Positions 31,001 through 64,000 of a DNA stretch of 64,000 nt are shown here, in pieces. The notes beneath the pieces are model-generated. The model did not search any database, was not told the origin of the DNA, and saw only the letters and a list, made by a program, of their open reading frames with translations. A program made the translations under genes and the position numbers. Source of the DNA: Pocillopora damicornis (lineage: Eukaryota); the NCBI RefSeq assembly GCF_003704095.1, contig NW_020847757.1:1-64000 (forward strand). The letters are read 5' to 3'. How positions within the stretch are numbered: position 1 is the first letter of the stretch; every line of letters starts with the position of its first letter.

Positions 31001-34000
31001 CAAAATGTGTCCACGCTGTAAAATCTTGGGCACATTTAAAGATACTTTTTTGAAACGTTCGGCTGCTGTTTGGAATCTTAAAACGCTGCCAGAATCATGG
31101 TTTCATCTATAATTTTTAATGGCGGAGACTAAAGTAATATATGGTCTCTGGAGTGTAAATCTCCCAGGAAAGTCGACAATGAGGTTTTGAATTGTCATTC
31201 GTTCTCAAAATTTTCACAGGTCATCCTTCGTTGGTAAGTTTAAGCGTCCTGGCTCTTCGACATCCACACCTCAGAGGTCTTCAACTTGGGACTTCGACTC
31301 GAACAAAAACACGATTAAGGAAAGACACTCCTACGACAGACCAAGCTCCAGTTCCTCGGGCGGATGGAGAAAGAAGCCAGATATTGGAACTGAGAAGGGG
31401 TCGCCCCCACTGGAAGTAAAGCGCACCGAGGATAAGGAATCAGTTCCGGAAGTGAAACTGGAACCAGAAACAGACAGCAGCTCGAGCTCTGAGGAAGAAG
31501 TCGAAGAGAAAAAACCAGTTGTGATTCCTGCAAAGAAAATCACAGAAAAAGATTTGAATGACATTGGGGCGAAGATTGTTAAGGCGGAAATCATGGGAAA
31601 CGAGGTGAGCGTTGAAAATCTCAATATTTTGCCGGCTTCAATACATGAAAGTAGTTTCTTGAAGTGTAAGCTTTTCAGTAATAAAGTAGCCGACTTAAAC
31701 AACTTGACAGACTGTGCAAAGGGAAACGTGTTAGATTAAGAGGTCATTTCACGCAAGGCGATCCGTTCTTGCGACACACTGTTGTTGGGTTAGCGCTGTA
31801 GTGACAATTTAGCTTCGTGTGACGTGGAGAATTTCTTTGTTTATCTTTGTTCTCGCAATAGAATTTCGTCAAACTGCTTTCACCTCGTGTCTGTTCGCAG
31901 CGAGAAAATGATTTGCAGCGACTTGGAAATACATACTGAGGGCTTTGTTGCATAGATCTTTTCCAGCGACTTTCAACTCAAGAAAATGCTCAATTAATGC
32001 TGTCGTTTCAAATTTGCTGACATTTTTAGCTGCTTGGTTAGTTTTGCTTTTAATGGATGGACATCTTCCGAAAATTCCCCAGGATTTAGCAACTAAGTTG
32101 AAGGCCCAGCTGGAAGAAATGAGAAAAAACAAGAAACTTCAAGAAGCGCAAGTGGAAGGAAGCAGTACAACGGAGGAGCAGATGGTTTTATTAACACGAA
32201 CCGATGCGACAGGAAATGTGTGGCCAGTGGAAATGACAGCTGAGGAAACGAGGGGAGGACGAAAGAAGCGACGAAAGGTAAAAACATTAGGGAGAACTGC
32301 TAACTAAAAATTTTTGTTACACTTTCGTTTGTTGAAACATGCGAATGCCACTTCACAGTTTTTCCTTTATCTACCTTTCGTTGCCGTTCCTTAGTCAATA
32401 GTGTAGACGAGATATCTTCAATGAACACGTATGAGACTTTACAATATTTTTAAGGTTTTTTGATCCCTGAGGTTGTCGTGTTATGGTGTTTCGAGAATTC
32501 TACTGATTTTGAATGAGCTCCACAGCCCTTTTACTCCTAAGATCTGAATATGAATTCTCTGCACTGTCTACCATACGTTTCTTTTAACTGTAGCTCTGAG
32601 AATTCAGTGTGAAATCAAACAATATTCCTTTCTTGACATTTTCCTTTCTTCCCATCACCTCTCTGTTTGAAAAAGAGGTTTCATCGCGAGGAGAAATTTC
32701 TTTCTGCTCATTCTGGGAAGTCAAAGGTTTATAGAGTTTTTCTGTTGCCCATTGTGGAGTTGTTCACACTCGTAGTTGTTTGAGAGCTTGATTTAAAACA
32801 AAACCTGTAAACCGAAAAAGATCTTTTGACCGAACAGCTCTTTGGTATGTATCTATCATTGTTCTTACACAATGTAGGTAGCCACACATGGTAAGGAAGG
32901 CAAAAGAGAGAGGTACTTCGCAGATGACGACAATTATGATCTGAAGGAAATGGTGAGAAGAGAGAAAACGAACTCTGGACGAAATGATCCCATGATGGCA
33001 AAAATGTTCAAGGTAATCAAAGGCACGCAATNNNNNNNNNNNNNNNNNNNNNNNNNNNNNNNNNNNNNNNNNNNNNNNNNNNNNNNNNNNNNNNNNNNNN
33101 NNNNNNNNNNNNNNNNNNNNNNNNNNNNNNNCCGGATTCTCCTGGGTGGAGAGAGGCATGGTGAGAGTAAAGTGTTTTTCCCAAAAACACAACTCAGTGA
33201 CCCAGCCTGGTCTTGAACCCAGACCTCTCGACCCGCAGACCAGCGCAATGATCATCAACCCACCGTGTCTCCCATTAATGATGAAAATGAATTCGATGTG
33301 TTTTGCTGTTTATCATTTCATCCAGAACATAGACAGTTGGCTGCTCAACTTGCACGATGTCGCTTCTGTTTTGAGAACCCTGACATCGCCAAACATCTCA
33401 TTATTGCCATAGGACTCAAGGTGGGGTGAGCTGTGTGTTATTTTAGGCTTATCCCTGTACACCCTAACATCAGTATCCATATTCTCCTTGCTCTTCTCTA
33501 TACGTTTCCTTTATTACTACCAAGGAGAATTGGGTTAATAATCAGAGCTTCTTAGGTGGGTGATCGTTTTCTTTATTCTCATGATCGTAATGAATGACTC
33601 AGCAGTATTACTGTGAGGAGAAAGTAGGCGCTGGTCACTCTTAGGGTTCAGAGAGTTAAGGTAGGGCGTAATGTGCCTGTGCAGGTTAGCAGTAAGTAGC
33701 TACTGTGAGAAATGTTTTAGAATCAGAGACAATCTTTGATATTTTATGATGGGCCAAAACAAAATGGATAACTGTGAAGGAACCGACCTGGAGTCCATCG
33801 TGCGAACTGTTAGTCCACCTCGCCTACCGCATAAGAGATTGTTAAGAATCTTACTTCTCTTTATGTAGACTCGATTTCCGTCGGTTTCTTGAGTCCGGTC
33901 TTTCATCCCCCTCCCCCCGTGACGGGGGGGGGGGGGTAGGGTGAGTGCCGGCTCATTTCTCGAACAGCAGTTAGTAACGGAGTCCACTTTTCATGATGTC

Positions 34001-48645: not shown

Positions 48646-49057
48646 GTCTACGCTAGAACAGATAAGGCCGTCAACCGCAGCTATTTATAAACCAAACCAT
48701 CAATTACAGACCGAGTTTATGTAATTCCTTCAAATATACACACGTAAACACACACGTTCTTTTAAACTGAAAGTGTTACGTCACGTGAAACACTCTGTCG
48801 AGTTCCGTCTCCTATCGGCTGTGTACTCGTTATAAAAGCAAAGGTTGTATATTTAATGAGGAAGTCTCATTGCCACCTTGTTCTACGTCGTGGTATAACT
48901 TTAGGATGCTAAGTGTAAGTATTCGTACCTTCAAATAATTTCAGTCGCACGCACACATTATTTAATTACGTGATTTATTAGTTGACAGTGGGAACGTCTA
49001 TGCTTTCACGCCGGCTAATACAAAATGAATACTTTTGTTTTTTTTTTCAAAGAGAAA

Positions 49058-51478
49058 CTATTGCCAAGGAAGCGAGCGCTGTTGTTGCCGCTGATGTTGA
49101 ACCATGAAATTTGCCAGCATCATTTTTAGCATGGCATTTTCTTTCTCAAGTTCCTCCATCTTCCTTGCGACCAAGCGATCTTTGTCTCTCTTCGCTTGCC
49201 GAGATTTTCTCGCAGACATATTGTTGCGTGATCGATTTCTCCAGTATTTCTCATCTTTGCATTCATCCGGGACAGAGTACCTGCTTCTTTTCCATTTCTG
49301 ATCAGAAACGCAATCAACAGAATCTAGGTTGTTCCTATCCTTTGGGTAAGAATGAGGAGAAAAATGACATTCGAAGGTGGCAACCTCTGTTGGAGAAGGA
49401 CCGTAAGCATGTCTAGGTTGTACAGGGTTGAAAAACGTAACAGCAGCACCAACTTGACAATCCACACCTGCGTTCCTGTATGACGTCATCATATTACGCT
49501 GGTGATCCTCTGCAACATTTGTCTGTGAACCTCCTTCTGTTTGAAGAGATGAATCCAGGTTCTCAAGCCAATCAATGGCAGAGGAAGCCATATCGAGTCT
49601 GGTAAGTTCAGGTGTCAGTTGGAAATCGCAGTCGACATTAAGGGGGCTGTATAACTGAAAGTCATAGTAATCCTTGCCGTCGTCTGAGAAGACCGTTGAA
49701 CAGGGTGAACTTCTACTTGATACATTTTCGGGAGATGGCAAATTTTGACAGAATCTTTCTCTGCCTGTCAGAGGGGTATAAAAGAAAAATTGAAAGATTG
49801 CGTGCGTTGAATTTTTATACATTGTAGAACCCAAATTGTTAAAGCTAAACTGAAACATTTTCTACCCTTCTCGACCTTAATTCTGTACTGAACATACGAG
49901 GCCAAGGTTTCCTCAAACACCAAGCTTACTTTTTAGTCTGACCTCTTTGTACTAGTCTCGTGTGCTCAAGCGGAAAATTAAAATCATCAACCTTTTTTTG
50001 AGGTTATGCTTCAGAGATACGACGCTTGAATCCCGAAATCTCCAATTTCTGCGTAATACTTATTCTAAAATTCAAGAAAGACGCATTTTTAAGTCGAGTA
50101 GTTCCATGAAACTGTTATTTTTTAAAACCTGGTCCTTTCATCGTCCACATAAAATTTTTAAGTGTCACTTTAGTTTTCGTTTATCGTTGATTATTTAATC
50201 GGCATCTTCAGTTTTCTTGAAAGTGAGGAGAATTTATGGTCTCATCATTCATGGGAGTGAGTGGGATTAAAGTCTTTGTGCATGGCGTCATTTAGAGAAG
50301 TACTTTGTGTTAAGGTATATATGGTCAGGATCTTCGAACTCTCACATTCCACACGCTTAAAACAACATAACCATTGCATGTTTTCGAAGGACAGCATTAA
50401 ACCGGCTCCCGCAATAAAAAAAATAGATGCTTTAAAATTTAGAGAGAGGTTTTAATGCTCGTTTTGTCACGAGTGTGCGACTAAAAATCCGACCCCCAAG
50501 AGGATTCCAATTTCACATCTCCGGTTTTGGCACACCTTTGCACTGCCTCGATTAAGGACCAGAGAGGTCTTTGATGGACAAGGCCATGTTACTAATCAGC
50601 CAAATACTTTTCCTTCTTTTTGCAGCTATCAAAACTTTATTTTGGCTTTCCTTTTTGGTAGATATTCTAATATATGTCGACCAGCCCTCTTGTTTCGCGG
50701 ATTTGTTTTTGTTCCTGGTCAACAATCCGTAAAATTATTATGAATGGATACATTTTAAAAACCTGGTTTGCAAATCATTTACGAAGACCTTTAATATCAA
50801 GTGAAAGCTTCGAACAGGCAAATTGATGCTGACTCTAACGAAAATAGAATAAAATACACTGCTTGCATACTGTTCGGCGCCATGGTGAGACAATATTTTA
50901 AGTTTTGATCATGAGACATTTTAATTTCGAAAAACTCAAATCAGGGCCGCCCACACTATTCGGATTTTTGCATAAATTGGATTTATTGCAAAGTACTTCA
51001 CGCAAATGGGAGTTTTTAGTTTAGTTTCGTGGACTGTTACAAAACCTAGCAAAATTAATTTGTCCACCGTAAACCGTAAATCGTGTGCACAAGGAGCTAT
51101 GTCTTTGCCGATATCTTATGAAATTTATCTGGGATCCAAGATAATTAGCGAGGACTTTAATCTATTGTTTTACAAAAACTAGTTTTTTAAAAGTTGGGTT
51201 GTCGTACGAATTAACTTTAAATACTTGACGAAGGCTTAGGTTGTCAAAGAAAATAAATTCGGTTTTGTTCAGCCACAAAAATAAATAACATGTGGTGGAA
51301 TGAGATTGTTTTGACCAAGGTTCTTCACTCGTGATAGTTGGGAGTGCCTGCATGAATAGGATGAACTGCTCTCCGGGAAGGCATACGAAATTTCTAGCTG
51401 AGCTGTTGGATAAAGTTATCCCTCTTTTTAAACTACTATAATACTAACATTACCTGGGATGAATTTACGTGCGGCCAT
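49058..51478 (-). CDS. PAR-type bZIP transcription factor A (TEF/HLF/giant-like)
   Basis: Main exon 49764-49058 (ctgacAG acceptor, phase 1) encodes VPDECKDEKYWRNRSRNNMSARKSRQAKR plus zipper MEELEKENAMLKMML. Two candidate phase-1 first exons: 51478-51454 (MAARKFIP, CAG|GTAATG) and 50883-50871 (MAPN, A|GTATGC). The first-exon choice is tentative. Confidence 0.85.
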
Positions 51479-54018
51479 TTTTGAATTCTTGTAGTGGCTG
51501 CCTTAGTAAGATATCGTCCGTCGAGGCTTTGATCATCAACAAAAGCTATGACTTTTCAGCTTTTATTTGGAAGGTTCGAAGATATGCATAACTTGATGAC
51601 TAAGAAAAAAAAGTTGACAATTGTAAATGGGCATGGTTGAAATAAATTCAAAGAATTGGACACCTTTCTCCGGACTGATTTCCCTCGAGTATTTAAAATT
51701 CATTTATTGTTTTCATTTTGCTGGACTAGTGGTCTAGAGAACGAGACGGTGTAAACATTCAATTTGACGCCGTGGGCGTTAATATGCAGATAAGACGAGT
51801 AACATGGAGCTAAAAGGCAAACATTTATGTTCTGACATTGAGTCATTTGTTAGAAAAACTCGATTATGTCCGGAGACGTCTGAAACTTACCGAAGATGAC
51901 ACGAAACTTGCCGAAGATGTCATCATCATTAACATCCTTTTGTTTAGTAGTGCAGGTGAAAAAAAAATTGAATGCCAATAAGATCAACGTAGACCTATAA
52001 TTTACAAAAATATTGATTCTCATATACTGATTGAACAGAGACTAATAAATAGGCACCCGTATTTATAGAATTTCTCTTCGAGTGTTCGACTCAAAATATC
52101 ACGAGTGAAATGGTTATCCTGTTAGACGTATTTGCCAAATGTCTCATTCTTCTCAGGGCACCCACCTCTTTTGGATAGTTGTTTTGCTGTCCGAAAGTAT
52201 TTCTAGTGTCTCGAAGGGTCAACACAAACTGGTCTCTAGTTCGGCCTCCTCTCTCACGAGTAAGGGTTTGACCGATGCGTATCGACTTTTCTTCACTCGT
52301 ATCAATTCGGATTTGTTTTACGCGACAAAAATTTTTCATATGCGGCGGTCAAGGCTCTGATAGTTCGAATCTTTCCGCGCCATGGGCCTATTTCTTCAAA
52401 GTCACGGTAACATAACGAGCCCAAAAATATATTTTGAAATCGAAATCTAAAGAGTGGTGAAGCTGGCTCTGACGCTCTAACCAACCATTCATTTTCTCAA
52501 TTTTCAAAACTTTTTAAAACCTATCTTGAAGGGAAACAGAATAGTTTTACGAGCCCGTTACGTTACCTGAACCTTCGAGAAACCAAAGTGGGCCCTAGGT
52601 TCGATCCTGTGGGGAGCGAAGTAGTTCGGACGAGTGTTTAAACTGTCAGCGGAAAAAGACAGAGAGTTCCACACAGCAGGCTGACTTCGCTGAAAGAAAG
52701 ACTGCTCATAGTCTGGTCAGATAGTTTACACGTGCATAACTACTATCAGAATTTTAGCCTAAGTCCATGAATCCTTCATTTACAGATGATAAATGGCGGG
52801 AAAATTTGTGGTCGTTTCATCACTGTTATGGTGACATTAACGAAGGACAATGTAATTTCGAATGAAGTTGATTTTTCTAATATAAAATCATAATCTTTTA
52901 ATCGAATAGTGATCATCCTTATCGAATGAAAATTATGTTTGTTCGCGTGACGTTGAATGTAATATCGAATGCCGGAAATTATTTTTTTTTTCAACGAATT
53001 GGAATATTTCCAACGGCTTAAAATCCACAATTTATCAAATGCCAATATTCTTAAAGAATAACGTAAATCATTGATCTGATGACATTTCTCACAATTCATG
53101 GAGGGAAATGAAACAGATGAAAATATCGAAATATCGAAACCGCCCAAGGTTAGAGATCATCTTTAATAGGGGCTTTCCCTGGATAAGAACAGTACTGTGA
53201 AAAAAGATAATTGAAAATTTAGACGAGGAAGTGCGAGATGGAAAAGTTCTGTGAAATGGGAGTGTAAAAAAAAAAAATAATTCAACGGTTGAGCACGTAA
53301 TAAATGCAGTAGTAAACGGCTTACTGAGATACTGAAAAGTGTTTATCTTATAAATTTGATATCGCCAATCACTGCTGAAAGACCTACCCGCATGTTACCC
53401 GCCTTTCGTACCACTCCACTCTTCCGTCAAGTTGTTGAGGGAAAAGGAAAGCGTTTCTTGTCAGTGAAGGAACAAGATGATACATGGTTGCTTGAAGTTA
53501 TGGAATTTATCTTCGGGTGTTCAACGCGATATCTCACGCGTTCGGCGCTGCGTTCACATGCCGTGCTGAAAACGTACCCACTATCAGTGTAATCTGTAAT
53601 CCCGGACGATGGGGGGAATCCTAGTGTCGAACGCAGTCAATTTCGAGATAACAAAAAAACATTTTTTCCATAAAAAATACAGCAGCACCAAAGAACAAAG
53701 GTAAACGCGCAACCAAAACAGAACGGCTGACTGCAATGTGCTGTTAGAGTTTATAAGAATGTCAATTTGGGAAAAAAGTTCAGCGAAATTTAACGGAAAG
53801 ACCTGTGAATGTGCTTTCCTCCTTTCCTCTCCAAAGACCGCCTATTAATTTGCTACCAAAGTCTTACTAGTTTGTAAAATTTCATGGTTATCGAGACAGG
53901 ACACCCAATTTTAACTGTCTAACCACAGGCTTGACAGCCTTTCTTCACGAGGACGGTCATGTGTTGTGGTTTTAAAGAACGATTTGTATTGCATAAGCCG
54001 AAACCAAAAGAGAGGCAA

Positions 54019-54411
54019 ATTACATAATCGTGCGTGACACGGCAGATATTAGATAAGATTGCTCCAATCTTCGGAAAATGGACTTCAACTTAATAGAAAA
54101 TTTCGATGATAATTAAATTTTTGACTTTAAAACCTGATCGCTGCTAAATTGCCCGCATAGAAATTGGATCGCGGAAAGCTCAGTCACGCGCTTCGAAGTC
54201 ACGACATTCCCCTAGACACGTGTATCGTCACACGTGGTTCGTTACACATAAATTTGCAATGTGACTACGTCTAAGCTGAAGAAACCGGAAACGTGAGATC
54301 CAACGTGAGTTTACCAACGTCGACCAATCAAATGTCTTGTTATGTAATACATTACATAAATGTTTGAAATTTAATTGATTCACACTCCTTTGTAATAGAA
54401 GCATGCACGTG
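54019..54411. promoter_or_regulatory. E-box/D-box cluster upstream of PAR-bZIP B
   Basis: CACGTG at 54217, 54231 and 54406. D-boxes ATTACATAAT at 54019, GTTATGTAAT at 54339 and ATTACATAA at 54351 (the last two form an inverted pair). CCAAT near 54324. Confidence 0.7.
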
Positions 54412-54549
54412 TCTCTCGTTCGTAAATAAACTACCGGCGAAATAATTGTCACCAGTGTAGTCTTGAAGAGTCACCGAGTCATCGCGAAACTAGTTAGCGA
54501 GCGATTCAGATCTTGTGGCAGATTACCTTACGAGACGCCGTCAAAACTC

Positions 54550-56677
54550 ATGGAGCTGCTTCAAGCACATGGAATTGAAAATTTTCACATTTCGGGTGAG
54601 AATATAAAATTTTGCTAAATATTCGTGCTGTACTCTTGCGAACTGCCCGTCCACACATGGGGCGGTCAATTCAAAATAATAATTTACATCCGATAAAACA
54701 ACAGTTTTCAATGGGGTACATTTTGCACTGGTATGAACGAAAATGAAACTGTCACTCGTGTTTAAAATTATTTTGGTGATGAGTTGAATGAAATATCGCC
54801 ATCCGACGAGCTTGAAAAACCCTCCGGATCAAAGTCCTTTACTACATTAGGATATTCCTGGTAATTTTTTTTAGCTGCAGTCAGGTATAACGTGGTGCGT
54901 GCATTGTTACATCAGAGCGCGAGCCTTATTTTAAGGACAGCCCTACGTTTATGTTGTATCAAAGTGTAAATCTCTTATAGTCTTTTAACCAATGTCTGTG
55001 GCGAAAGATTTTACTTAATAAAATTAATATATTGCATCAACTTTGTCTCAACAAAGTTTTAATGGTTAACATGGCAAAAAAACCGCGTAACTAAAAGGCA
55101 GAACACCTTTACACGGTACTCTTAAATTGTGGCATGGTAGTTAACAAAAATTTGGTCATTGTCGAAGTAGTTCTGAAGAATTCTGAAGAATTCTGACCTG
55201 AGGAAGGAAATACGCCCCTCCATCTCTTTCTCAATGAAGCAAAGTTTAACAAAACACTTTCAGGTTTACAACAATAGACCAAGTTCGTTTGAAACAATTT
55301 CCAAAATCATGTGGCATTTGTTACTTAAGAGTATGGAACGTATTTCCATTTGAACCGGAGAACAGTTTTCTACAAGTTCCTTAGAAGTTTGTAATTAATT
55401 ATTTCAGACAGAGGGTATAACAGTAGTGTCCATTCCTGACCCTCAGTGTAGAAGTGCTGCTTGTGGGCGGTTTCTTTGCGTGTTCAGTTTTGTGAAAAGT
55501 TGGGAACAACACTAGCAGTTACAGAGGACGACGCGGCTGACGCAATTCAGAATGTTCTTACATGATAATGTTTTATTGAATCTCAGTACAATACAGAGCT
55601 ACTTATCACAGCCACACCTAGCTGATTCATATTTGCGCTGTTGCCTCTTCGGTGCTCTTATTTCAATGTCCAAAGTTAATGTGCTCACCTACTTTTATCT
55701 TCAATTCAACAGAGAAGAACATGTCCGGGTTTGATGATGACGAAGACAGCGGTTTAAGCTCATCTCCTTCCTCTCCCGGTGTAGCGGACAATGAAAGCGA
55801 TCCACAGTTGTTTGGATTTGAAAATGAATTGAGTTCGAATCTTGTGGATGCCCTCAACACGTGCCTCTTTGACGGCGAATTTCCCAGTAAACTGTATACT
55901 CACATAAAGATCAAAGAGGACGGCGACGATGAGCCCTGGCAAAACGTTGCCTTTCCGGGTCAGCTTAGACACGATGTAGCTTCGCAATCACTCGGTAATT
56001 TATCCAGTTTATCGAGTGATTTCTTTGAGGAACCTTTCAAGTTATTGGACGATTTATTTGAGCCTTCAACTAGTGGAAAAGTCGACTATGAACGGTCAGG
56101 AAAACTGCCGTATCTCACTGAGGATAGTTTGAAGGAACCATGCCCTGATTACTCGTCGAATGATACTACTGACACTATTACGAACATTGTCGAAGAGCCA
56201 GCGATCGAAGTCGTTTGTTCTTCGGAAGATATTCGACGGAACTCACTTAAGCGCAAACTCAGAACTCGCAACAAAATCAGTGTTATCACTGATCACAACT
56301 ACGTGAAACCGTTAGATGCAGCTGCTGAGGCTAACAGTGAGTTCGGTGATGATGATAAGATTACAGTGTCTGAAGATACAGAAGCGGAAGAGGAAGAAGA
56401 TGATGACGACGAGGATTTTCAGCCAACTTGTTCAGCAAAGAAATCACGCCGCGCCTCTCCAAACCCTAGCACAGGTAGAGACCAAAAGTACTGGGAACGA
56501 AGGAAAAGGAATAATTTGGCGGCAAAACGATCACGCGAAGCTAAACGAGCCCGCGAAATTGCGGTCGCCAAAAAGACTTCAACCCTAGAAAAAGAGAACA
56601 ATACTCTGAGAAGGCAGGTTCAGAGACTGAAAGCGGCAATCTCTAAAGCTGAGAAAAAACTGCGCGCTATGGTGTAA
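54550..56677 (+). CDS. PAR-type bZIP transcription factor B (TEF/HLF/NFIL3-like)
   Basis: Main exon 55713-56677 encodes RDQKYWERRKRNNLAAKRSREAKRARE plus zipper TLEKENNTLRRQVQRLK. A candidate in-frame first exon is 54550-54595 (MELLQAHGIENFHIS, G|GTGAGA, phase 1). The alternative start is the ATG at 55721. Confidence 0.88.
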
Positions 56678-59573
56678 CAATGTTAGTCACTTTTAGAAGG
56701 ACATATGAGTATATTTTCTCCCAATTTGCTCGTTACGTTGCGTTTTATTAAAAGGAAATTGCGTTCCATATTAGTTCAATATTCTTTCAGGATGTAAAGA
56801 TTAGTTATTCTCAGCGCTATAGTTTATGTATTCATCATGAAAAATTCATTCTTAATGCGTCAGGGAACGCTTGTCGTCTGTGAAACGCTTGGTGTAGTAT
56901 TCATGTTCAGATGTATCCTTCAATCCTGTGTAAATATATCGCGACTTTTGAACAGTATACGGGCTGGACTTTCTTTGACTCGTATTCCCATTTAAGGAAA
57001 ATTAAGGCTCAAAGCGCTAAAATCGTGGTTACATGCACGATTCAATTTCACTTGGTCAGAGAAAACTCCCTCTGTAAACCTGACTACTTGGCGAGGTAGG
57101 AATGTGGCAACCTCGCTTCCAGGTGTCGTGTTAACCTCGAGATGGTGAGATTGGTTGGGTTGAGAGAGATTAAAAGTATCTGATTCGAAGCACCAGAAAG
57201 GAACTTAAATCACGCTTCTAAATTTTAGATCTCGAGCACCTCTAACTGTATCGCTGGTAGCTAAATAGCCTTATTATTGGGGACGACAATTATGTTGAGT
57301 TAACAGACGGACTTGGAGTGAAACTGAGTAACGACAGTGCGAAGATAGCGCGGATCACAGCACTCGCAAGAAGCTTGGGTAAACCAAGCAGACACCATCT
57401 ATACCGGCTTTTTCCTCCTATCTATTCAGAGGAGACAATCCACTTGACCTTCCTTGTCTATCGTGCACTTTCCTTGTCGCTTGGTTCTGTGAAGCAAAAG
57501 CTTGCGCAGCGCTCCTCAGTAGTAGTTAATGAAGATGGAAACACTTGCGCAAGTTAGCTGGTTTGCTTTCAAGCAACTAATTAGTTTCGAAGTATATTGG
57601 CGCAGTACGGAACCCCAAATTTAAACTTCTACCAGAAAGTGGCTATATTATCGCGGCAAAATGCGCAAGGAGTTCGAAGTGCGTGGACGTCGGCACCGGC
57701 AAGCTTGAAGAATTTCATGCCAGGATTAATTTTACGTAACGTGGCAATTTTATAGAAGCTTCTGGTGTTCGGTCTTTTTGATAACTTTCCTAACCCAAGC
57801 ACAGTTTTTAACTGATAGGCTCAAAGTAGTTCAAAAAACAAAGTCACGGGTATTCCGGCCTTAACTCTTCGGTCAAGGAGAGAATCGCAAGCAAGGGTGC
57901 CGGCCGAACACCAATGACCAGGTCATTGTAACTCACTAAACAACTATTTCGCGAGGGAAAAACAAACAAACCAACAAACAAAGAGAGCAATTTCTGGGTA
58001 GCTATTTGTGTTTCGGATTTTGAAAAAACATTTGAAATAACACTGGGCCTTCAAAGAATAACTAATTTTGCCCTTTGTTTAAGAATCCTCTCAGTCTCTT
58101 TTCGGCCAATTTAAAAGTTTGCAGGTGAGATTTGTTGCTTTCCTCTAGAAAAATCTTTTCCGCTTAGCTTCCTAGTTTACGGCAAAACAATTTGTCTTGA
58201 AAAATCAACCTTTAAACAGGCAAAAATAACTTAGATATCCAGGTTAGCCAGCGTCCACCGTTGGATGCAAAACGGATCGAGAAGGAGCCAGACAATAAGG
58301 ACTTATGGGGGAAGATGGCGGAAGAGGATAGGCCGATACGCACTCCTCCTCCATTTTCAGAAGGAAGGTAAAATTCAAGCGGGCCGATTATCCTCCACTC
58401 TTTCTTTCCCTTTCTCCCTCTTACGAACCCTTTGACCCCTAGAAGTGACCAGCGTATGATTTCTCCTAACTTACACTTGCATCACCCCTGAATGAAACAT
58501 GAGAATTAAGGTATCGATCACTAACTAAAAAGCCTTTTAATGGTTAAAGAAATTCTTCTCGTTAAAATGTTCATTCTGATGTTAGGGTGTTAAGTGATCC
58601 AACTGCAAGTAAACAGCTTGGCCGAGGAAGGTCTGGGTTCAAGACAAGTACCCAGACTAGTGAATGGTTTCAGTTCGTTTACCGACAGAAATGACCAGAA
58701 ATGCACTTCTCTACGTTTTGAAAACACATTTTTTAATGAATGCTGTCAATCACCTCCTCAGCTTTTCCGACAAACATCTATTGTGCCTCGTGTGACTAGT
58801 GGGAAATTACATTGGTTTTGATTCTTTACGCACAAAGATTTTTCTAGAACTTTAAATAACGCACACCTCCACAAAGTGTTTAGGCATTTGCGGTTTCTCA
58901 TGCCTCAAGAAGTTTTGTTTCGTTTTTTTCATTTTGAGGTCTTGTAAGCAGCTTTTTGTGATGCTATATTTGCCTCGTTTCAATTTTTATTTCGAAAGGA
59001 AGCTCAACACGAGTTTCCTTTGCGTAAAACCAGCCACTCGCGTTAAGCGTGGGACGAGTGTTAAAAATCACGTTTTTGCTTCTTCAACACGCAATACCTC
59101 GTGAACTTTATGGTGTGAGGGCAGTGGTGCATGGTGAGTGGCATGATTAGTTCTCACAGGAGCTGTTCAACTTTGCATAAAATTTTGATAATTAAATCGC
59201 AATGAAAGCAAAAACAGGGGAAATTAGATCTAAAAAACAAGAGGACAGACGCTCCACGTAAAACTGTAACTTTGCATGATTTCCCAATTTGATTGAATAT
59301 CACTTGGGTTTAACCAAAAAGTCGATCTATCTTTCTCTTCCGATATCCAGGCTAGCTGAGCACGTTTAGCATGTTTAGGGCGAGAAAAACAAGAATCAAC
59401 CCCGGTTGCCGAGCGTTAACTGGATCTGGACGCGAGAAAACCCGTTTTTCAGAAAAATCCTGGGCGCTTTAAAGAAGCTTTGCGTAACTGTAATAGTTGC
59501 TCAACGTCGTTTGGTGTTAATTTTTTATAATGGAAACTATTCTTGTTCTCTGTGAAATTAAATCATGCAGCCG

Positions 59574-60483
59574 GTTACGTAACTGGTTCGCGGTATCGAG
59601 TTGTAGATGAGTATTCTTGCTTGGCCGAACTCACCAAACCAAATTTTTTTTGCGTGCGCGATTTCATTTGGAACCTATTGTTGCCACGCAATGTGCCCTC
59701 CAGGAACCACTGCTAAAGTGACCTCTTTAGCCTTTTTTGTGGCCAAAAAAAAAAGGTAAAAAAAAAAAAGAAAACCGCTAATATTGCGAAACTGGATCAA
59801 CCGATGTGGAAAGATCTTTGAATGACCTTAAGGTTCAAATTTTTTCCGTTTAGTCACGCATGCCACTTAGGGTCTTACGGTGGTCCGGTAAATGTGATTT
59901 TCGTAAGCCTAGCAATGCAAATTTTAAGGATTTGGAGCTCCTAAAAATATATGTTCTATCAATGCGGTTTTCTCTGCTGATTATTAATGTAAACCCCTGA
60001 AGAGACGGTTTTTTTGTGCGGGTTGCTATTTTTGTGAGAAATAATTGTGGTTGGCCCATCTTTAGGTTGCATGCTCCTGACACAAAATACAAAAACCGTA
60101 TCACGGTCTTTAAATCCGCAAAAAAGAAAATACTTTTGAATGAAATATCAAAGAAACCGTTTCATAGATGTTGGTCTCTGCAGGTTCGATCACCTTCGCC
60201 TAGAACATGGAGCCTAAAAAATTTTACCTCGGAAAAGTAAGACAAAACTAAATCTGCTTTTCGCAAGCGAAATCTGTGGTCAGGATTAAGAGCGATGTGA
60301 AATCCGAAAGAAAAACTTCAAACCACAATTTGGGTAAATTATAGAAATTCAGCCAAATCTTGGCCCACGAAATGTCAAAACAAGTTTGTCTGGGAGATAC
60401 TAACGGCGGAAACTAGATATTTGCTTATTTTGCCGTGAAACTACTGCACGTGAAATCACGTGTACGTCTTCGCTTGTGATTGG
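59574..60483. promoter_or_regulatory. Palindromic D-box and tandem E-boxes upstream of the Grainyhead-like gene
   Basis: GTTACGTAAC at 59574-59583, CACGTGaaatCACGTG at 60447-60462, and a reverse CCAAT (ATTGG) near 60479. Confidence 0.65.
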
Positions 60484-61138
60484 TCTAGCCGTTACGCCTG
60501 AGGAACTGGCACTAATTATCCCATGACGCGTATAGCAATGACGGAGCCAGGCAATAGGAAGAATCACTGGAGTAGGGACGATGAGCTACAATGAAAAATT
60601 CTCCATAATGTCGAATTTCTCGATGGTATCGACAATTTTTAAAAAAAAGATATTAGACTATATCTACTCTGATTTTCTGACAGCTAACTGGAATATCTTT
60701 ATGGCTATTTCTTCTTCTTAATGCATAGGATAAACATATCCCTACCCCCTACTGGTAGGGGATCGGAACTCCTGCTCAACCAGGTTTGCACTAAGAAGCC
60801 GTCGAGACTATCACCGTCAAGCGAGACCAGCATCGTGTGTTGTTATAACTTGTTTTTCGTTTCCAAAGATGTAGATTCAAATATATTTCGTAGCATTTCG
60901 TTTTCTTGGCAGAACATTACCAAAGCGTGAAACCTTCGAGAGCTTCAAGAGGCTGTGAAATAATTTTCTATCGGAGAAAGTCTTGTTTCATTTCGAGAGT
61001 TGTCAGTTCCGGGATAGTCGCGTTAAACAGTAGCTCAACGGGCCGTTGCTTTCGCTTATTTTTCCCTTTCTGGGAGCTGGAAAATCGATTTGAGGAGTTT
61101 GGTTGAGTTTTAATTGGACTGTAAAGGGTCCTCAGTGT

Positions 61139-61494
61139 ATGGATATGGTTGTCAAGATTATGCAGGCCCGCTTTCCCTCTCAATTTGACCAAGAAAAGTA
61201 CTCTACTCCTTTGTTTAAGAATTTACGGGAGAAGGCAAGGAAGAGAACTGCTCACGAAGCGTTTTCTAAAACTGCGGACGCCCTCGATGATCTTGAACTA
61301 GCTCCTAGGATTAAACGTGTCGTTCGGCGGCCACCGCCTGCCTTAACGATATATGTACGCAGAGAGAGCGAGAAAGCGTACAATGCTATAATGCTGGAAG
61401 AAGTAACAGTCGAGAGTTTAAAACTGGCGTTGTCTGAGAAGTACGGCACTCCGTCAGATTCAATCACGAGTTTCGCTCTTCGATGCAAAGAAGG
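61139..61494 (+). CDS. Coding exon with a Grainyhead/CP2 C-terminal (ubiquitin-like dimerisation) domain; the gene probably continues past the window
   Basis: LTIYVRRESEKAYNAIMLEEVTVESLKLALSEKYGTPSDSITSFALRCKEG resembles the GRHL C-terminus (LYVRKE.EEVFDALML..P.LKGL.EAIS.KY..P..I......CKKG). Donor GG|GTAAGT at 61494. In-frame TGA upstream at 61091. Confidence 0.75.
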
Positions 61495-64000
61495 GTAAGT
61501 TGAATTTAATCTCGTTAGAGAGTGGAGATTTCACGATCTTAGTCTTAAATCAAAAATGAAAGGCAGGAAGTGTGTACGAAGGGGAGTATCGAAGTTGTTT
61601 ATTTTTAGTATACTTACGCATGCTAGATGATCGTATGTGCACGAGTTTACGATATTTTCCCCTCGTGAGCTGTCGCTAGTTTTTGCTCGAAACAGCTGAC
61701 CGTGTTTAGTTTGTGTTAGAAGTCATTTTGCTTACTTTGTAGTTCAGTTCTGCAAGGTGAACTATTGAGACGTAAAAGATTTGCATTCTCTCCATATTAG
61801 TCGTAGCGAGTTTTGCGAAACAATAGATTCGATTTTCATTTATATTGCATACTTCAAGGGTTTTGAATTTATTCGAAAAATAAAGCATTAGTTCTCATCC
61901 TCCCTTTCAATTTACGAGGCGCTTCTGAAGCTTATTTTGCGTGTTTGCTGTCATGATTTTTATGGCGTATCTTTCGCTTCACTCACGTTTGCCGGCCTGG
62001 GTTAGCTCATAGTTCATGTTTCTTGGCACGTGGTAACTTGTTATTCCAGTTTCTAACCAGTTTTATTTACACCTCCATTCATTTCTTCGATCGATAAGTA
62101 TTTCTTTCAAATTCTGAGTTTGGCTTTTTGAAGGTTTTTCTTTTTTGTTAGTACTTTTGGTTCGACTGATTAAATCTTGTTTACTGTTGCATTTACTCGT
62201 CAAAGCTGATTGTCGTGTTGATCCGGTTGAAAGGAATGATTCCCAGAACTCGTTACCCTTGTCATGCTATTATATTCGCTTATGGCTTTGTTGTTGACGT
62301 TAATTGTAAATTATTTCATGAAAAAGGCTTTTATTTATCCTAATGAATCGTCGAGATTTTTATGTCAAGGGAGTGAAATCGTGACAGTGCAAGTTTTTTT
62401 TACTGTTGTTGTTTTTAATTCCATCAACAATAACTGACAACGAGATCTCGACGGGTTTTTTTGGAATGTTTCTTTTGAGAGTTCAAAGTTCGTTTGGTTT
62501 TGTGCATTGTTTAGGTGTTTGTGTTGTTATTTTCTAAGTGAAGGCCAACCATTTAATACAATTTCTAAATTATTGTCCCATAAATTTTCATCAAAATTTC
62601 ACGCTCACTTCAGTTCTTGGTCTTCAGATTTTAACAATTAACATTAAAAGTTTGTTTACAACGTCTAGCTATTTTGATTTTTCTTCTTAATGTGACAGTA
62701 GTTTTGTCTTCTTTTTTGTTGTGAACAAATTCCACATTTTGGAATACAGTAACTACGTTTTTAAAACTTCTTGAAGGGTTATACCCTCAGTATTTGCGTA
62801 GGGTAAGATTTGGAACTTTTTGGCCTTGTCTCAGCATGTTTGTGCTGACTATACAATAGTTTTCAATGAACCTCTTCCCTTGCTTCCTGCCTTTTATTGC
62901 AATTAGATATAAATTGTATTATTGGAAAATGCCAAAGTGATGTCTTTTCTACTCTGACAACAACACTGTTTTTGACATGTTGTTAAAATTTTTAAAATTT
63001 ACACTGTCATAATTTGGGAGATGTTAGTTTGCCCGGCAAATTGTTCTTGTTTCATGCAGTAGAAGAGTATCAGTTTGGTACAATAGTAAAAGTTATTTTT
63101 ACCTAGTGCTATTCACAGCATGGCTCATGTGACATGGCCATTTGGAAAAAAATGAAAAATATATGTATTTGCTTCTGCGATATTTCAAAGGAAGGTTGTT
63201 GTGGCTTATTTGACTTTTGTTTTCTTTGTGCCATTCTGTGAATAAGATCTGAATTAAAAGGGATTAATGGAGCAAGTTGGGGCTGTTTGTGTGCATATTT
63301 GTGGTTAATTGACTTAATAGTGCTAAACCATGAGTGTAATGGAATTAGTGTTGATGCTTAAATGTTTTAGTAAGCCATGTGTATAAGTCTGTTTGTCATT
63401 GTACTGTATTTTTAACATGTGTTTATTGACCGCTGGGGGTATTGGAAGGGTTGGAATGAGTAAATAGTACACATTTCAATATCCCACCATTTAATTTCTG
63501 ACTTTGTGATGCAACCCGACATGTATACTTAAATGTGTCCCACAAACAAGTATCATTGCACAAAGTAGCATTGACATGGACTTCATAAATGACAAACTGG
63601 GCAAATTCAATTAGGATGATCTGTTTTGTTTTGTGTCCCCATTGTTTTGAATTTCAAGGTTGCAGTCTGGCAGGTCATGCGCTAATTGGGATATTGACTT
63701 GTATAATTTATCCATGCTCAGTGGTATACTTTAATCTGGGAATATAATCCTTTTGATTGTTGCTGTTTTGATTGTAGCTAATGTTCCTCCTCAGTGCAAG
63801 GCTGACTGGTACAGTACACAGTTTGTTAGCTTTGATTTATGTTCCTTCACTGCATTTAGCATGGTTTACTCTAGTCCAAAAGTATGAAAATAAATTTCTA
63901 GTTATTAATATTTGGGCTGGGGTCACACTTACCCTGGCATCATTCCAAGCTGTGGCTCACAAACATTCTTCTTGCTGTTGACTGTATAACATAAACATAT

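What the first reader, a model, noticed from the sequence alone, without database searches (positions are those of the whole stretch)
48700..62070. Candidate physically clustered clock/light-output module: divergent PAR-bZIP pair plus a Grainyhead-like gene under E-box and D-box control
Seen: two PAR-type bZIP genes lie back to back (A minus, B plus), followed by a third transcription-factor-related gene. Non-coding CACGTG E-boxes occur at 48782, 52729, 54217, 54231, 54406, 60447, 60457 and 62027. D-box cores TTAYGTAA occur at 48717, 54020, 54340, 54352, 57732 and 59575, with variants TTGCRTAA near 50967, 53989, 59020, 59173 and 59480. By eye the first 48 kb has very few such sites. Established: CLOCK:BMAL/CYCLE binds CACGTG, and PAR-bZIP and NFIL3/Vrille proteins bind RTTAYGTAAY. 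Inference: the locus is a self-regulating secondary clock loop, driven by CLOCK and fed back on by its own products, with linkage allowing shared enhancers. Caveat: this block is CpG-richer, which inflates CACGTG counts.
Basis: partly seen in the sequence, partly recalled or inferred. Interest (0 to 1): 0.8.

Follow-up and report, generated by a model that had tools for sequence, protein, structure and literature searches.

The report
Conserved coral PAR-bZIP clock-output cluster
A stony-coral (Pocillopora) gene cluster of D-box-type bZIP regulators and a tiny Grainyhead-tail protein has E-box and D-box promoter sites that are kept across corals and, for one gene, in a sea anemone. This makes it a strong, testable candidate for the day-night (clock or light) output loop of cnidarians.

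Summary
Every listed motif is at its coordinate. The excess survives CpG correction: CACGTG 9 vs 2.0 and TTAYGTAA 6 vs 0.9 on block-only dinucleotide shuffles, and the genome-wide density gives the same expectation.

The signal is not spread over the block. It sits in three conserved regulatory modules:
- the bZIP B promoter (54.0-54.43 kb);
- the promoter of the third gene (60.44-60.49 kb);
- intron 1 of the third gene (62.03 kb).

These boxes are invariant or nearly so in up to eight orthologous coral loci, including Stylophora and Oculina. The core of the B promoter (CCAAT, D-box, E-box, TATA) recurs upstream of the Nematostella B orthologue. Sites 48717, 48782, 52729, 54231 and 60457 are not conserved as canonical boxes.

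RNA contigs set the gene models for A and B. The third gene encodes a 159-aa protein that has only the GRHL C-terminal dimerisation domain. It has no DNA-binding domain.

The cluster is conserved across Scleractinia. It extends beyond the window to a third PAR-bZIP at about 71 kb with the same promoter grammar.

CLOCK binding, feedback and rhythmic expression remain inferred. This is a new member of a known kind (Dbp; vri/Pdp1; the Nematostella PAR-bZIP loop). The scan noted a similar E-/D-box enrichment on another piece of this genome (s1-784401, untested here).

The parts
49058..49764 (-). bZIP A, coding exon 2 (includes the bZIP domain and the stop codon)
   Evidence: Pfam bZIP_2, E 2.2e-8. 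The best solved relative is NFIL3. The splice joint 49763/51453 (GT..AG on the minus strand) appears in RNA contig X14. Orthologues are 72-34% identical, with a conserved VPDECKDERYWRKRSRNNMSAKKSR basic region.
51454..51518 (-). bZIP A, exon 1 with the start codon (ATG 51478-51476). The 5' end is not determined.
   Evidence: An RNA contig piece covers 51453-51518 and is joined to exon 2. The reading frame over the joint was read from the sequence.
53988..54028 (.). Distal element of the B promoter: ATTGCATAAG (D-box/C-EBP-like) plus the D-box ATTACATAAT
   Evidence: TTGCRTAA is kept in 7 of 8 coral loci. TTACATAA is kept in 5 of 8 (alignment A3).
54217..54236 (.). B promoter E-box (54217), followed 8 nt later by a second box (54231)
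   Evidence: The first CACGTG is kept in 7 of 8 loci; L006 has CACATG. The second is CACGTG only in Pocillopora. Elsewhere a degenerate box sits 6-8 nt away (AACGTG in Oculina, CGCGTG in L004) (A3).
54290..54307 (.). Tandem AACGTG boxes (CACGTT on the opposite strand) with a 6-nt spacer
   Evidence: The CGTGA/GTGA cores and the spacing are invariant in 8 coral loci. The spacing also holds in Nematostella. AACGTG and a 6-7 nt spacer match the mouse E1-E2 element (PMC3043000). This is suggestive only.
54324..54330 (+). CCAAT box (CCAATCA) of the B promoter
   Evidence: Invariant in 8 of 8 coral loci and present in Nematostella.
54339..54360 (.). Inverted double D-box (GTTATGTAAT, then TTACATAA)
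   Evidence: The first TTAYGTAA is invariant in 8 of 8 coral loci and present in Nematostella (GTTATGTAAC). The second is kept in 5 of 8.
54406..54430 (+). Proximal E-box (54406-54411) and TATA-like GTAAATAAA (54422-54430) of B
   Evidence: CACGTG is present in all 8 coral loci and in Nematostella at the same place. TAAATAA is invariant in corals. RNA contig 5' ends lie at 54426-54440.
54426..54595 (+). bZIP B exon 1 (5' UTR plus probable start ATG 54550, encoding MELLQAHGIENFHIS)
   Evidence: Exon 1 is spliced at 54595 to 55713 in 4 RNA runs from 4 studies. The exon-1 ATG is in frame, and ATGGAGYTG is invariant. The length 318+18 = 336 aa matches XP_058969162.1 of P. verrucosa.
55713..56677 (+). 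bZIP B exon 2 (remaining coding sequence, bZIP domain, stop codon)
   Evidence: Pfam bZIP_2, E 7e-13. NFIL3 is the best solved relative. The protein is 98% identical to 'protein giant-like' of P. verrucosa and 78% to Stylophora 'Thyrotroph embryonic factor'.
60436..60485 (.). Promoter block of the third gene (G): E-box 60447, second box 60457, ACGTC, inverted CCAAT (ATTGG 60479-60483)
   Evidence: About 50 bp are almost invariant in Pocillopora, Stylophora, Oculina, L002/L003 and L006. The first CACGTG is invariant. The second is CACATG outside Pocillopora (A2; A7).
60869..60874 (+). Conserved start-stop mini-uORF in the G leader (ATG TAG; ATG TGA in other corals)
   Evidence: It lies inside an invariant block of alignment A2.
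61139..61494 (+). Gene G exon 1: N-terminal part and first half of the GRHL1_C domain. It ends at a GTAAGT donor. Exon 2 lies outside the window at about contig position 66.4 kb.
   Evidence: Pfam GRHL1_C, E 1.6e-15, positions 2-54 of 90. The exon is 85-87% identical to other corals. Full proteins of 157-159 aa cover GRHL1_C positions 2-89 of 90 and nothing else. Exon 2 was located.
61990..62090 (.). Conserved block in G intron 1 with E-box 62027 (TTGGCACGTGGTAAC)
   Evidence: The E-box and its flanks are invariant in 5 of 5 coral loci, at the same offset (+880 to +900) from the ATG (A4).
48717..48787 (.). D-box 48717 and E-box 48782 downstream of A: not conserved, no support for function
   Evidence: Alignment A5: neither box is kept, even in the closest unnamed relative L001.
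52729..52734 (.). E-box 1.2 kb upstream of the A start: specific to Pocillopora, no support for function
   Evidence: There is no CACGTG in the A-B intergenic region of Stylophora or L001 outside the B promoter.

Best explanation
The block is the core of a conserved hexacorallian gene cluster in a Pocillopora genome. The gene order is bZIP A (-), bZIP B (+), a 159-aa GRHL-C-terminal-domain-only protein G (+) and, just outside the window, a canonical PAR-bZIP C (-).

B, G and C each have their own promoter-proximal module, built from the same parts:
- one or two CACGTG E-boxes beside a CCAAT box;
- in B and C, RTTAYGTAAY-type D-boxes as well.
G also has an invariant E-box in intron 1.

Most likely mechanism:
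1. A bHLH factor drives B, G and C through the E-boxes. CLOCK:CYCLE is the prime candidate.
2. The D-box-type bZIP proteins made from this cluster bind the D-boxes of B and C and so auto- and cross-regulate them. These would be activator-like PAR members, and possibly NFIL3-like repressor members.
3. The result is a sharp diel (light- or clock-phased) output, as with Dbp/E4BP4 in mammals and Pdp1/vrille in flies.

Shown here: the gene models, the motif excess, the deep conservation of the boxes, their spacing and their position at the transcript start, and the conserved linkage.

Inferred: which proteins bind, the sign of regulation, rhythmic expression in this species, and any feedback onto Clock.
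For: STATISTICS. Block-only shuffles and genome-wide densities agree. The same excess is seen independently in Oculina (9 vs 3.7, 0 of 100 shuffles reach 9) and in Stylophora (7 vs 2.3, 1 of 100). All nine Oculina CACGTG sites lie in the B, G or C regulatory regions.

POSITION. RNA contigs from 4 studies place the 5' end of B exon 1 at 54426-54440. That is 15-35 bp downstream of E-box 54406, 70-100 bp downstream of the D-box pair and about 200 bp downstream of E-box 54217.

CONSERVATION.
- B promoter, alignment A3 of 8 loci whose B proteins are only 38-78% identical: D-box 54340 in 8 of 8, E-box 54406 in 8 of 8, E-box 54217 in 7 of 8, CCAATCA in 8 of 8, TAAATAA in 8 of 8.
- The same order (GTGAG x2, CCAATCA, GTTATGTAAC, CACGTG, TATATAAA, homologous exon 1) lies upstream of the Nematostella B orthologue.
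- The G promoter E-box and the G intronic E-box are invariant in all coral loci compared.
- The C promoter has E-box, D-box, E-box and CCAATCAGAGT in both Pocillopora and Oculina.

SYNTENY.
- Solute_trans_a, A, B, G is seen in L002, L003, L006, Stylophora and Oculina. In Stylophora the A exon is present but unannotated.
- A and B are also paired in L001 and L004.
- B, G, C is seen in Oculina.
- G lies next to the B orthologue in Nematostella.

GRAMMAR RARITY. The pattern CCAAT-N5-25-TTAYGTAA-N30-60-CACGTG occurs 4 times in 234 Mb, and 0 times for the reversed control.

LITERATURE.
- Nematostella model with CLOCK:CYCLE driving PAR-bZIPs; CACGTG enrichment upstream of candidate pacemaker genes; Par-bzip expression altered in the NvClk mutant (PMC11093582; PMC7222589).
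- PAR-bZIP-a and -c are strongly rhythmic (PMC10188108).
- A TEF-like gene is rhythmic in LD and DD in Acropora tenuis (PMC11271600).
- Paired D- and E-boxes occur in light-induced Aiptasia CRY promoters (PMC8097283).
Against: - No expression time series could be examined here. The RNA runs were contigs only, so neither level nor phase is known.
- CACGTG is also bound by USF, MYC/MAX, MITF/TFE and HES/HEY-type factors. TTAYGTAA-like sites are also bound by C/EBP and ATF relatives.
- In Nematostella, candidate pacemaker genes, PAR-bZIPs included, become arrhythmic in constant dark (PMC11093582). The drive may therefore be light rather than a self-sustained clock.
- Tandem-box spacings do not all fit the mouse E1-E2 rule. 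The G promoter has a 4-nt spacer and B has 8 nt in Pocillopora.
- Gene A has no conserved box.
- The conserved promoters also hold other invariant elements (RCGTGAS x2, TCAC, TTTGCAATGTGAC), so other factors act there.
- I could not assign A and B to the activator (PAR) or the repressor (NFIL3/vrille) branch.
Confidence: 0.6

Rival explanations
1. The conserved boxes are functional but are not read by the circadian clock. Under this reading the cluster is a direct light / UV / oxidative-stress (or feeding or temperature) response unit. D-boxes would be driven by stress-activated bZIPs, as in the zebrafish light-responsive module. E-boxes would be bound by USF, MITF/TFE, MYC/MAX or HES/HEY (Helt). 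Expression would be diel only under light-dark cycles.
For: - D-box plus E-box pairs mediate direct light, ROS and UV induction in fish, and occur in light-induced Aiptasia CRY promoters (PMC8097283).
- Nematostella PAR-bZIP-a follows the light cycle directly. Candidate pacemaker genes are arrhythmic in DD (PMC10188108; PMC11093582).
- The G promoter tandem has a 4-nt spacer, which worked poorly for CLOCK:BMAL1 in mouse assays (PMC3043000).
- An extra TGACG element follows the G promoter E-boxes.
Against: - Par-bzip transcript levels change in the NvClk mutant.
- A TEF-like gene stays rhythmic in DD in Acropora tenuis.
- The canonical CACGTG is kept exactly, rather than as a loose CANNTG.
- Degenerate second boxes lie 6-8 nt from E-box 54217 in several species, and the AACGTG tandem has an invariant 6-nt spacing. 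Both resemble E1-E2 elements.
Confidence: 0.27
2. The motif excess is a by-product of an unmethylated, CpG-rich, conserved promoter landscape around developmental transcription-factor genes, and the boxes have no specific regulatory role.
For: - The whole 48-62 kb block has CpG o/e about 1.
- The block was picked after the motifs were seen.
- 48717, 48782 and 52729 are not conserved, and 54231 and 60457 are canonical boxes in Pocillopora only.
Against: - Block-specific dinucleotide shuffles already account for CpG content, and the excess remains.
- 16 kb of other CpG-rich sequence in the window has 1 CACGTG.
- The boxes coincide with the invariant columns of alignments in which flanking sequence is scrambled.
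- They recur in Nematostella.
- The composite grammar is nearly unique in the genome.
Confidence: 0.05

Closest known systems
Nematostella PAR-bZIP feed-forward loop (model of Reitzel et al. 2013, as described in PMC7222589 and PMC11093582)
   Same: The same family of D-box-type bZIP genes in a cnidarian. They are proposed CLOCK:CYCLE targets, and CACGTG enrichment within 5 kb upstream has been reported. The Nematostella B orthologue has the same promoter core.
   Different: I found none of the following in the papers searched: the D-boxes in the bZIP genes' own promoters, base-level conservation between corals and anemone, the gene cluster, or the linked GRHL-C-only gene. I could not establish which named NvPAR-bZIP (a-d) corresponds to B.
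Mammalian Dbp / E4BP4 (NFIL3) D-box loop
   Same: A PAR-bZIP gene driven through promoter and intronic E-boxes, including tandem E1-E2 elements. Its output goes through D-boxes, with an antagonistic NFIL3-type partner (PMC3043000; Mitsui 2001 as cited in PMC8097283).
   Different: Here D-boxes sit in the bZIP genes' own promoters, and several paralogues are physically clustered. In mammals Nfil3 is driven by RRE elements (my own knowledge). The spacing rules fit only partly.
Drosophila vrille / Pdp1-epsilon second clock loop
   Same: Two D-box-type bZIP genes, an activator and a repressor, that are direct CLK:CYC E-box targets and feed back on Clock (Cyran 2003, as cited in PMC7222589 and PMC10188108).
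   Different: As far as I know, vri and Pdp1 are not neighbours. Feedback on Clock is untested in corals. The activator or repressor roles of A, B and C are unknown.
Zebrafish light-responsive module (E-box plus D-box in per2 and cry1a) and Aiptasia AnthoCRY promoters
   Same: Closely spaced D- and E-boxes in a proximal promoter of a light-induced gene (PMC8097283).
   Different: Those are cryptochrome and period genes. Here the module sits on the D-box factors themselves.
Grainyhead / CP2 transcription factors
   Same: Gene G has a complete GRHL1_C (dimerisation) domain, Pfam positions 2-89 of 90.
   Different: G has no CP2 DNA-binding domain, in the protein or anywhere on the contig. The protein is 157-159 aa long and conserved from Nematostella to corals. 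It is a relative that carries only this one domain, not a family member in the functional sense.

Membership tests
PAR / NFIL3 (D-box-type) bZIP transcription factors | bZIP domain of the bZIP_2 type | tested here: met
   Pfam PF07716: A E 2.2e-8, B E 7.2e-13, C E 5.1e-12, all above the cut-off.
PAR / NFIL3 (D-box-type) bZIP transcription factors | Extended basic region K-D/E-x-x-Y-W-x-R/K-R-x-K/R-N-N-x-A-A-K-R-S-R shared with NFIL3, HLF, TEF and DBP | tested here: met
   B reads RDQKYWERRKRNNLAAKRSREAKR and C reads KDERYWERRIKNNVAAKRSRDLRR. A has a conserved variant, KDEKYWRNRSRNNMSARKSRQAKR. NFIL3 is the top solved hit for A and B, ahead of C/EBP.
PAR subfamily proper (HLF / TEF / DBP / Pdp1) | Proline- and acidic-residue-rich PAR domain just N-terminal of the basic region | tested here: inconclusive
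   By eye, C has a P-rich stretch (NPLPITKKAERKF) that resembles the HLF/TEF PAR region as I recall it. B has an acidic run followed by FQPT..AKKSRR. A has VPDECKDE, as in NFIL3. No reference PAR sequences or tree could be used, because the script machine was lost.
PAR / NFIL3 (D-box-type) bZIP transcription factors | Binds RTTAYGTAAY | not testable with these tools
   Needs EMSA, DAP-seq or ChIP.
CLOCK:CYCLE (BMAL) target / clock-controlled gene | Canonical CACGTG in the promoter or an intron, conserved in related species | tested here: met
   54217 (7 of 8), 54406 (8 of 8 plus Nematostella), 60447 (all coral loci compared) and 62027 (5 of 5).
CLOCK:CYCLE (BMAL) target / clock-controlled gene | Tandem E1-E2 element with a 6-7 nt spacer | tested here: inconclusive
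   From E-box 54217, the second box lies at 8 nt in Pocillopora and at 6 nt in Oculina (AACGTG) and L004 (CGCGTG). The AACGTG tandem at 54290/54302 has an invariant 6-nt spacer, but both boxes are non-canonical. The G promoter spacer is 4 nt.
CLOCK:CYCLE (BMAL) target / clock-controlled gene | About-24-h rhythmic mRNA, dependent on Clock | not testable with these tools
   Only contigs of RNA runs were available. Relatives are rhythmic in Nematostella and Acropora.
Grainyhead / CP2 transcription factor family (gene G) | CP2 DNA-binding domain (PF04516) | tested here: not met
   Full-length orthologues of 157-159 aa hit only GRHL1_C. The only CP2 exons in the genome are on contig C3576. A spliced Acropora transcript has a closed 158-aa ORF.
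Grainyhead / CP2 transcription factor family (gene G) | GRHL1-type C-terminal dimerisation domain (PF25416) | tested here: met
   E 7e-26 to 6e-18, covering positions 2-89 of 90. Window exon 1 covers positions 2-54.
Conserved co-regulated gene cluster | The same gene order and orientation in distant species | tested here: met
   Solute_trans_a, A(-), B(+), G(+) in at least 4 other scleractinian species, plus A/B alone in two more. B, G, C(-) in Oculina. In Nematostella only G and B are adjacent, and their order is swapped.

The most novel reading that the evidence does not exclude
The cluster is an ancient (pre-Scleractinia/Actiniaria split) co-regulated clock or light unit, and the DNA-binding-domain-less GRHL-tail protein G is itself a rhythmic output or regulator. 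G might, for example, dimerise at set times of day with full-length Grainyhead/CP2 factors and so gate epithelial gene programmes, or act on the bZIPs. Linkage to bZIP B would then have been kept for hundreds of millions of years because the genes share a regulatory domain. This would add a new component to the cnidarian clock, which lacks PER.
Probability: 0.3. Interest if true: 0.8.

Novelty: new member of a known kind. Interest (0 to 1): 0.58.

Why it matters
Cnidarians lack Period, and the wiring of their clock is an open question. The PAR-bZIP 'second loop' is so far a model, built mostly on expression data from Nematostella.

This locus gives base-level cis-elements that have been kept between reef corals and, for the B promoter core, a sea anemone:
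- an E-box / CCAAT / D-box / E-box / TATA module of about 230 bp in the B promoter;
- matching modules on two neighbouring genes.

The loop therefore becomes directly testable with reporters, EMSA or DAP-seq, and the existing NvClk mutant. The locus also points to a previously unremarked, highly conserved small protein (GRHL C-terminal domain only) as a likely co-regulated gene.

For coral biology, diel control of such regulators bears on calcification, symbiosis and the timing of spawning.

Tried and rejected
1. K-mer rank control (rank of CACGTG and TTAYGTAA among all k-mers of the block, higher-order Markov background) and a bZIP phylogeny. Neither was run, because the script machine was lost. 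I used genome-wide pattern counts and in-window controls instead.

2. Expression level or phase from public RNA runs. All holders were Logan contigs, so only splice joints and transcript extents could be read. Transcript evidence for G and for the B 3' end in this species is therefore missing.

3. Conservation of the boxes around A. The region 3' of A does not align beyond the coding sequence. The exon-1 pattern of A was not found in other loci. No conserved A promoter was defined.

4. Mapping the Nematostella B orthologue (EDO49631) and G (EDO49630) to named NvPAR-bZIPs or to rhythmic-gene lists. There were no hits in papers or supplements.

5. Genome-wide search for the composite CCAAT / D-box / E-box grammar. 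Three other hits lie near a phosphatidylserine-decarboxylase-like exon, near a transaldolase-like exon and in ORF-poor DNA. They showed no evident clock link and were not followed.

6. The Nematostella G promoter has a CACGTG at a similar offset (-658), but the alignment to the coral block is not convincing. I did not count it as conserved.

7. An Acropora genomic locus for G could not be fetched, and the look-ups were then exhausted.

8. Spliced proteins of A, B and G were not joined or typed. Exons were searched by reference, and full-length database proteins (P0015, P0132, P0136, P0143, P0151) were used instead.

9. No complex or structure prediction was run, because no claim here rests on one.

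Full report
SOURCE. The window is the first 64 kb of a 453-kb contig (C4392) of a 234-Mb coral genome. Protein B is 98% identical to XP_058969162.1, 'protein giant-like', of Pocillopora verrucosa. The runs that hold the DNA are labelled coral or marine metagenome. The genome is therefore a Pocillopora. The N run at 33032-33131 was left alone.

OBSERVATION. There is one further CACGTG, at 55858, inside B coding sequence. The window is a mosaic: stretches with CpG o/e of 0.1-0.26 look like methylated gene bodies, and stretches near 1 look unmethylated. The region 48-62 kb is one continuous stretch at 0.93-1.18.

The excess survives correction for this.
- 2000 dinucleotide-preserving shuffles of the block alone: CACGTG 9 vs 2.0 (P 0.0005), TTAYGTAA 6 vs 0.94 (P 0.001), RTTAYGTAAY 3 vs 0.17, TTGCRTAA 5 vs 1.36.
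- Genome-wide density: CACGTG occurs once per 7.16 kb, which gives 1.97 expected. RTTAYGTAAY gives at most 0.40 expected.
- The other 16 kb of CpG-rich sequence in the window holds a single CACGTG.
- CACGTG makes up 9 of 52 ACGT cores inside the block, against 2 of 68 outside.
These P values are post hoc, since the block was chosen because of the motifs. I therefore give more weight to the evidence from other species.

GENE MODELS. I laid RNA contigs from four studies on 49000-54999.
- Gene B. A first exon reaches 54426-54440 at its 5' end and is spliced at 54595 to 55713 in all four runs. The ATG at 54550 in exon 1 is in frame across the joint and is invariant among species. It adds 18 residues, giving 336 aa, the length of the NCBI protein.
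- Gene A (minus strand). A short first exon holds the ATG at 51478. It is spliced to 49764 (one run, GT..AG). The 5' end of A is not defined.
- Both are Pfam bZIP_2 proteins, and their best solved relative is NFIL3, ahead of C/EBP. They belong to the D-box-type PAR/NFIL3 group. Whether each is activator-like (PAR proper) or repressor-like (NFIL3/vrille) could not be settled.
Exons were searched by reference, and full-length proteins came from the databases.

THE THIRD GENE (G). The ORF at 61139-61494 ends in a GTAAGT donor. Its second exon lies about 4.9 kb further on, outside the window.
- Orthologues are 157-159 aa in Pocillopora, Oculina, Acropora and Nematostella. They hit only GRHL1_C, over positions 2-89 of 90.
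- A spliced Acropora transcript contig carries a closed 158-aa ORF.
- The only CP2 DNA-binding exons of the genome are on another contig.
G is therefore a small protein made of the Grainyhead dimerisation domain plus about 65 N-terminal residues. It is not a Grainyhead transcription factor. It is strikingly conserved: exon 1 is 85-87% identical between corals whose B proteins are 38-46% identical.

CONSERVED LINKAGE. I fetched orthologous loci through the B and G proteins.
- The order Solute_trans_a, A(-), B(+), G(+) holds in Stylophora pistillata, Oculina patagonica and the unnamed coral assemblies L002/L003 and L006. In Stylophora the A exon is present but unannotated.
- L006 is probably a complex-clade coral, because its G shares an Acropora-specific signature.
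- A/B pairing also holds in L001 and L004.

A search of the window's own genome showed a third, more canonical PAR-bZIP gene, C, at contig position 70999-71844 on the minus strand, just beyond the window. Oculina has the same B, G, C(-) arrangement.

In Nematostella, G (EDO49630) lies 3.6 kb upstream of a B-like bZIP gene (EDO49631) on the same strand. The G-B linkage therefore predates the split between anemones and stony corals, although the order of the two genes differs.

CONSERVED BOXES. Alignment of the B promoter from eight coral loci has 53% mean identity but sharp invariant islands. In order, these are:
1. ATTGCRTAAG (7 of 8);
2. D-box ATTACATAAT (5 of 8);
3. E-box 54217 (7 of 8), followed 6-8 nt later by a degenerate second box (canonical only in Pocillopora, at 54231);
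4. a tandem of AACGTG-type boxes with an invariant 6-nt spacer (54290 and 54302);
5. CCAATCA (8 of 8);
6. D-box 54340 (8 of 8) and its inverted partner 54352 (5 of 8);
7. E-box 54406 (8 of 8);
8. TAAATAA (8 of 8);
9. the start of the transcript.

The Nematostella B-like gene has the same core in the same order: two GTGAG boxes at the same spacing, CCAATCA, GTTATGTAAC, CACGTG, TATATAAA, and a homologous first exon that begins with M-D-I-L.

The G promoter contains an almost invariant 50-bp block with E-box 60447, a second box (CACGTG in Pocillopora, CACATG elsewhere) and an inverted CCAAT. G intron 1 contains an invariant TTGGCACGTGGTAAC at 62027, at the same offset in five loci. The C promoter reads E-box, D-box, E-box, CCAATCAGAGT in both Pocillopora and Oculina.

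In the 26-kb Oculina locus, all nine CACGTG sites fall in these B, G and C regulatory regions. The expectation is 3.7, and no shuffle of 100 reached 9. The composite of CCAAT, D-box and E-box within about 90 bp occurs only four times in the genome, and never for the reversed control.

BOXES WITHOUT SUPPORT.
- 48717 and 48782 (3' of A) are not kept, even in the nearest relative compared there.
- 52729 has no counterpart in Stylophora or L001.
- 59575 is shared only with Stylophora, which is too close to be informative.
- 57732 and the TTGCRTAA sites at 50968, 59020, 59173 and 59480 have no evidence either way.
Gene A therefore has no conserved E- or D-box that I could find.

MECHANISM. The anatomy matches what is known for D-box-type bZIP genes in clocks.
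- Mouse Dbp is driven through promoter and intronic E-boxes, including tandem E1-E2 elements with 6-7 nt spacers and AACGTG as the second box (PMC3043000).
- Fly vri and Pdp1 are CLK:CYC targets.
- The published Nematostella model has CLOCK:CYCLE driving PAR-bZIPs. CACGTG is enriched upstream of candidate pacemaker genes, and Par-bzip transcripts are altered in the NvClk mutant.
- PAR-bZIPs are among the most robustly diel genes in Nematostella.
- A TEF-like gene cycles in LD and DD in Acropora tenuis.

I therefore think the following is most likely (0.6). B, G and C are driven through their conserved E-boxes by CLOCK:CYCLE. The D-boxes in B and C let the cluster's own bZIP products auto- and cross-regulate.

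The main rival (0.27) keeps the elements functional but assigns them to a direct light, ROS or stress pathway and to other bHLH factors. That fits the fish light-responsive module and the loss of rhythm in constant dark in Nematostella. Chance or CpG artefact is unlikely for the conserved boxes (0.05). It is probably the right reading for the non-conserved ones.

JUDGEMENT.
- Supported: the enrichment, the promoter location and the conservation it asked for.
- Not shown: 'driven by CLOCK', 'fed back on by its own products' and 'shared enhancers'. Each gene has its own proximal module.
- Corrections: the third gene has no DNA-binding domain, and the cluster has a fourth member outside the window.

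In kind this is a new member of a known class, the E-box-driven D-box bZIP loops. Three features were absent from the papers I searched: the D-boxes on the bZIP genes' own promoters, base-level promoter conservation between corals and Nematostella, and the ancient linkage to a GRHL-tail-only protein with invariant E-boxes.

A similar E-/D-box enrichment was noted by the scan on another piece of this genome (s1-784401). I did not test it. In passing I saw that other PAR-like bZIP loci here are also rich in CACGTG upstream.

Noticed in passing
outside the window: contig C4392 70999-71844 (-), = L009 6999-7844; promoter at L009 8190-8260: A third, more canonical PAR-bZIP gene (C; 281-aa ORF with KDERYWERRIKNNVAAKRSRDLRR) lies convergent with gene G. 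Its promoter reads E-box, D-box, E-box, CCAATCAGAG, and this is conserved in Oculina.
   Followed up: yes
window 60869-60874: A start-stop mini-uORF (ATG TAG here, ATG TGA in other corals) lies inside an invariant block of the G leader. It may control translation.
   Followed up: no
window 1-64000 (2-kb bins): CpG o/e is sharply bimodal: 0.08-0.26 against 0.7-1.2. This looks like mosaic gene-body methylation. The transcription-factor cluster lies in one 14-kb unmethylated-looking domain. That domain starts right after the Solute_trans_a gene and ends inside G intron 1, at about 62.5 kb.
   Followed up: partly
window 54596-54999 (B intron 1): In all four RNA runs, intron 1 of B is also covered by contigs, at 2-54% of the exon-1 contig depth. 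This may be unspliced pre-mRNA or DNA carry-over. It would explain the high word shares (0.7-0.84) of the RNA runs.
   Followed up: no
window 52077-52264 (-): A low-depth RNA contig (run X1) lies between A and B, upstream of a TATAAATA at about 52065. It could be an alternative 5' exon of A or an unannotated transcript.
   Followed up: no
G000 C1689:99750-100780 (L017 6159-7184) and C883:277940-283660 (L019): Other PAR-like bZIP loci of the same genome are also rich in CACGTG. One has 4 sites within 1.8 kb upstream of the bZIP exon (C1689). Another has 6 sites in 9 kb (C883), against about 1.3 expected per 9 kb. Two further bZIP hits lie 17 kb apart on contig C580.
   Followed up: partly
G000 C1725:44595, C2707:316117, C3501:110810: These are the only three other genome matches to the composite CCAAT / D-box / E-box grammar. 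Nearby ORFs look like phosphatidylserine decarboxylase and transaldolase exons. No clock link is evident.
   Followed up: partly
L011 (Nematostella DS469508.1) 21040-21095 and 21380-21490: There are two D-box plus E-box pairs (36-38 bp apart), about 385 bp from each other, upstream of the Nematostella B-like gene. Only the proximal pair aligns with the coral promoter. NCBI annotates this gene only as a 68-aa partial protein (EDO49631), although a 324-aa ORF is present.
   Followed up: partly
L007 (Stylophora LSMT01000120.1) 5022-5045 (-): The A-type bZIP exon is present but not annotated in the Stylophora assembly record. Reverse-transcriptase-like ORF fragments lie beside it.
   Followed up: no
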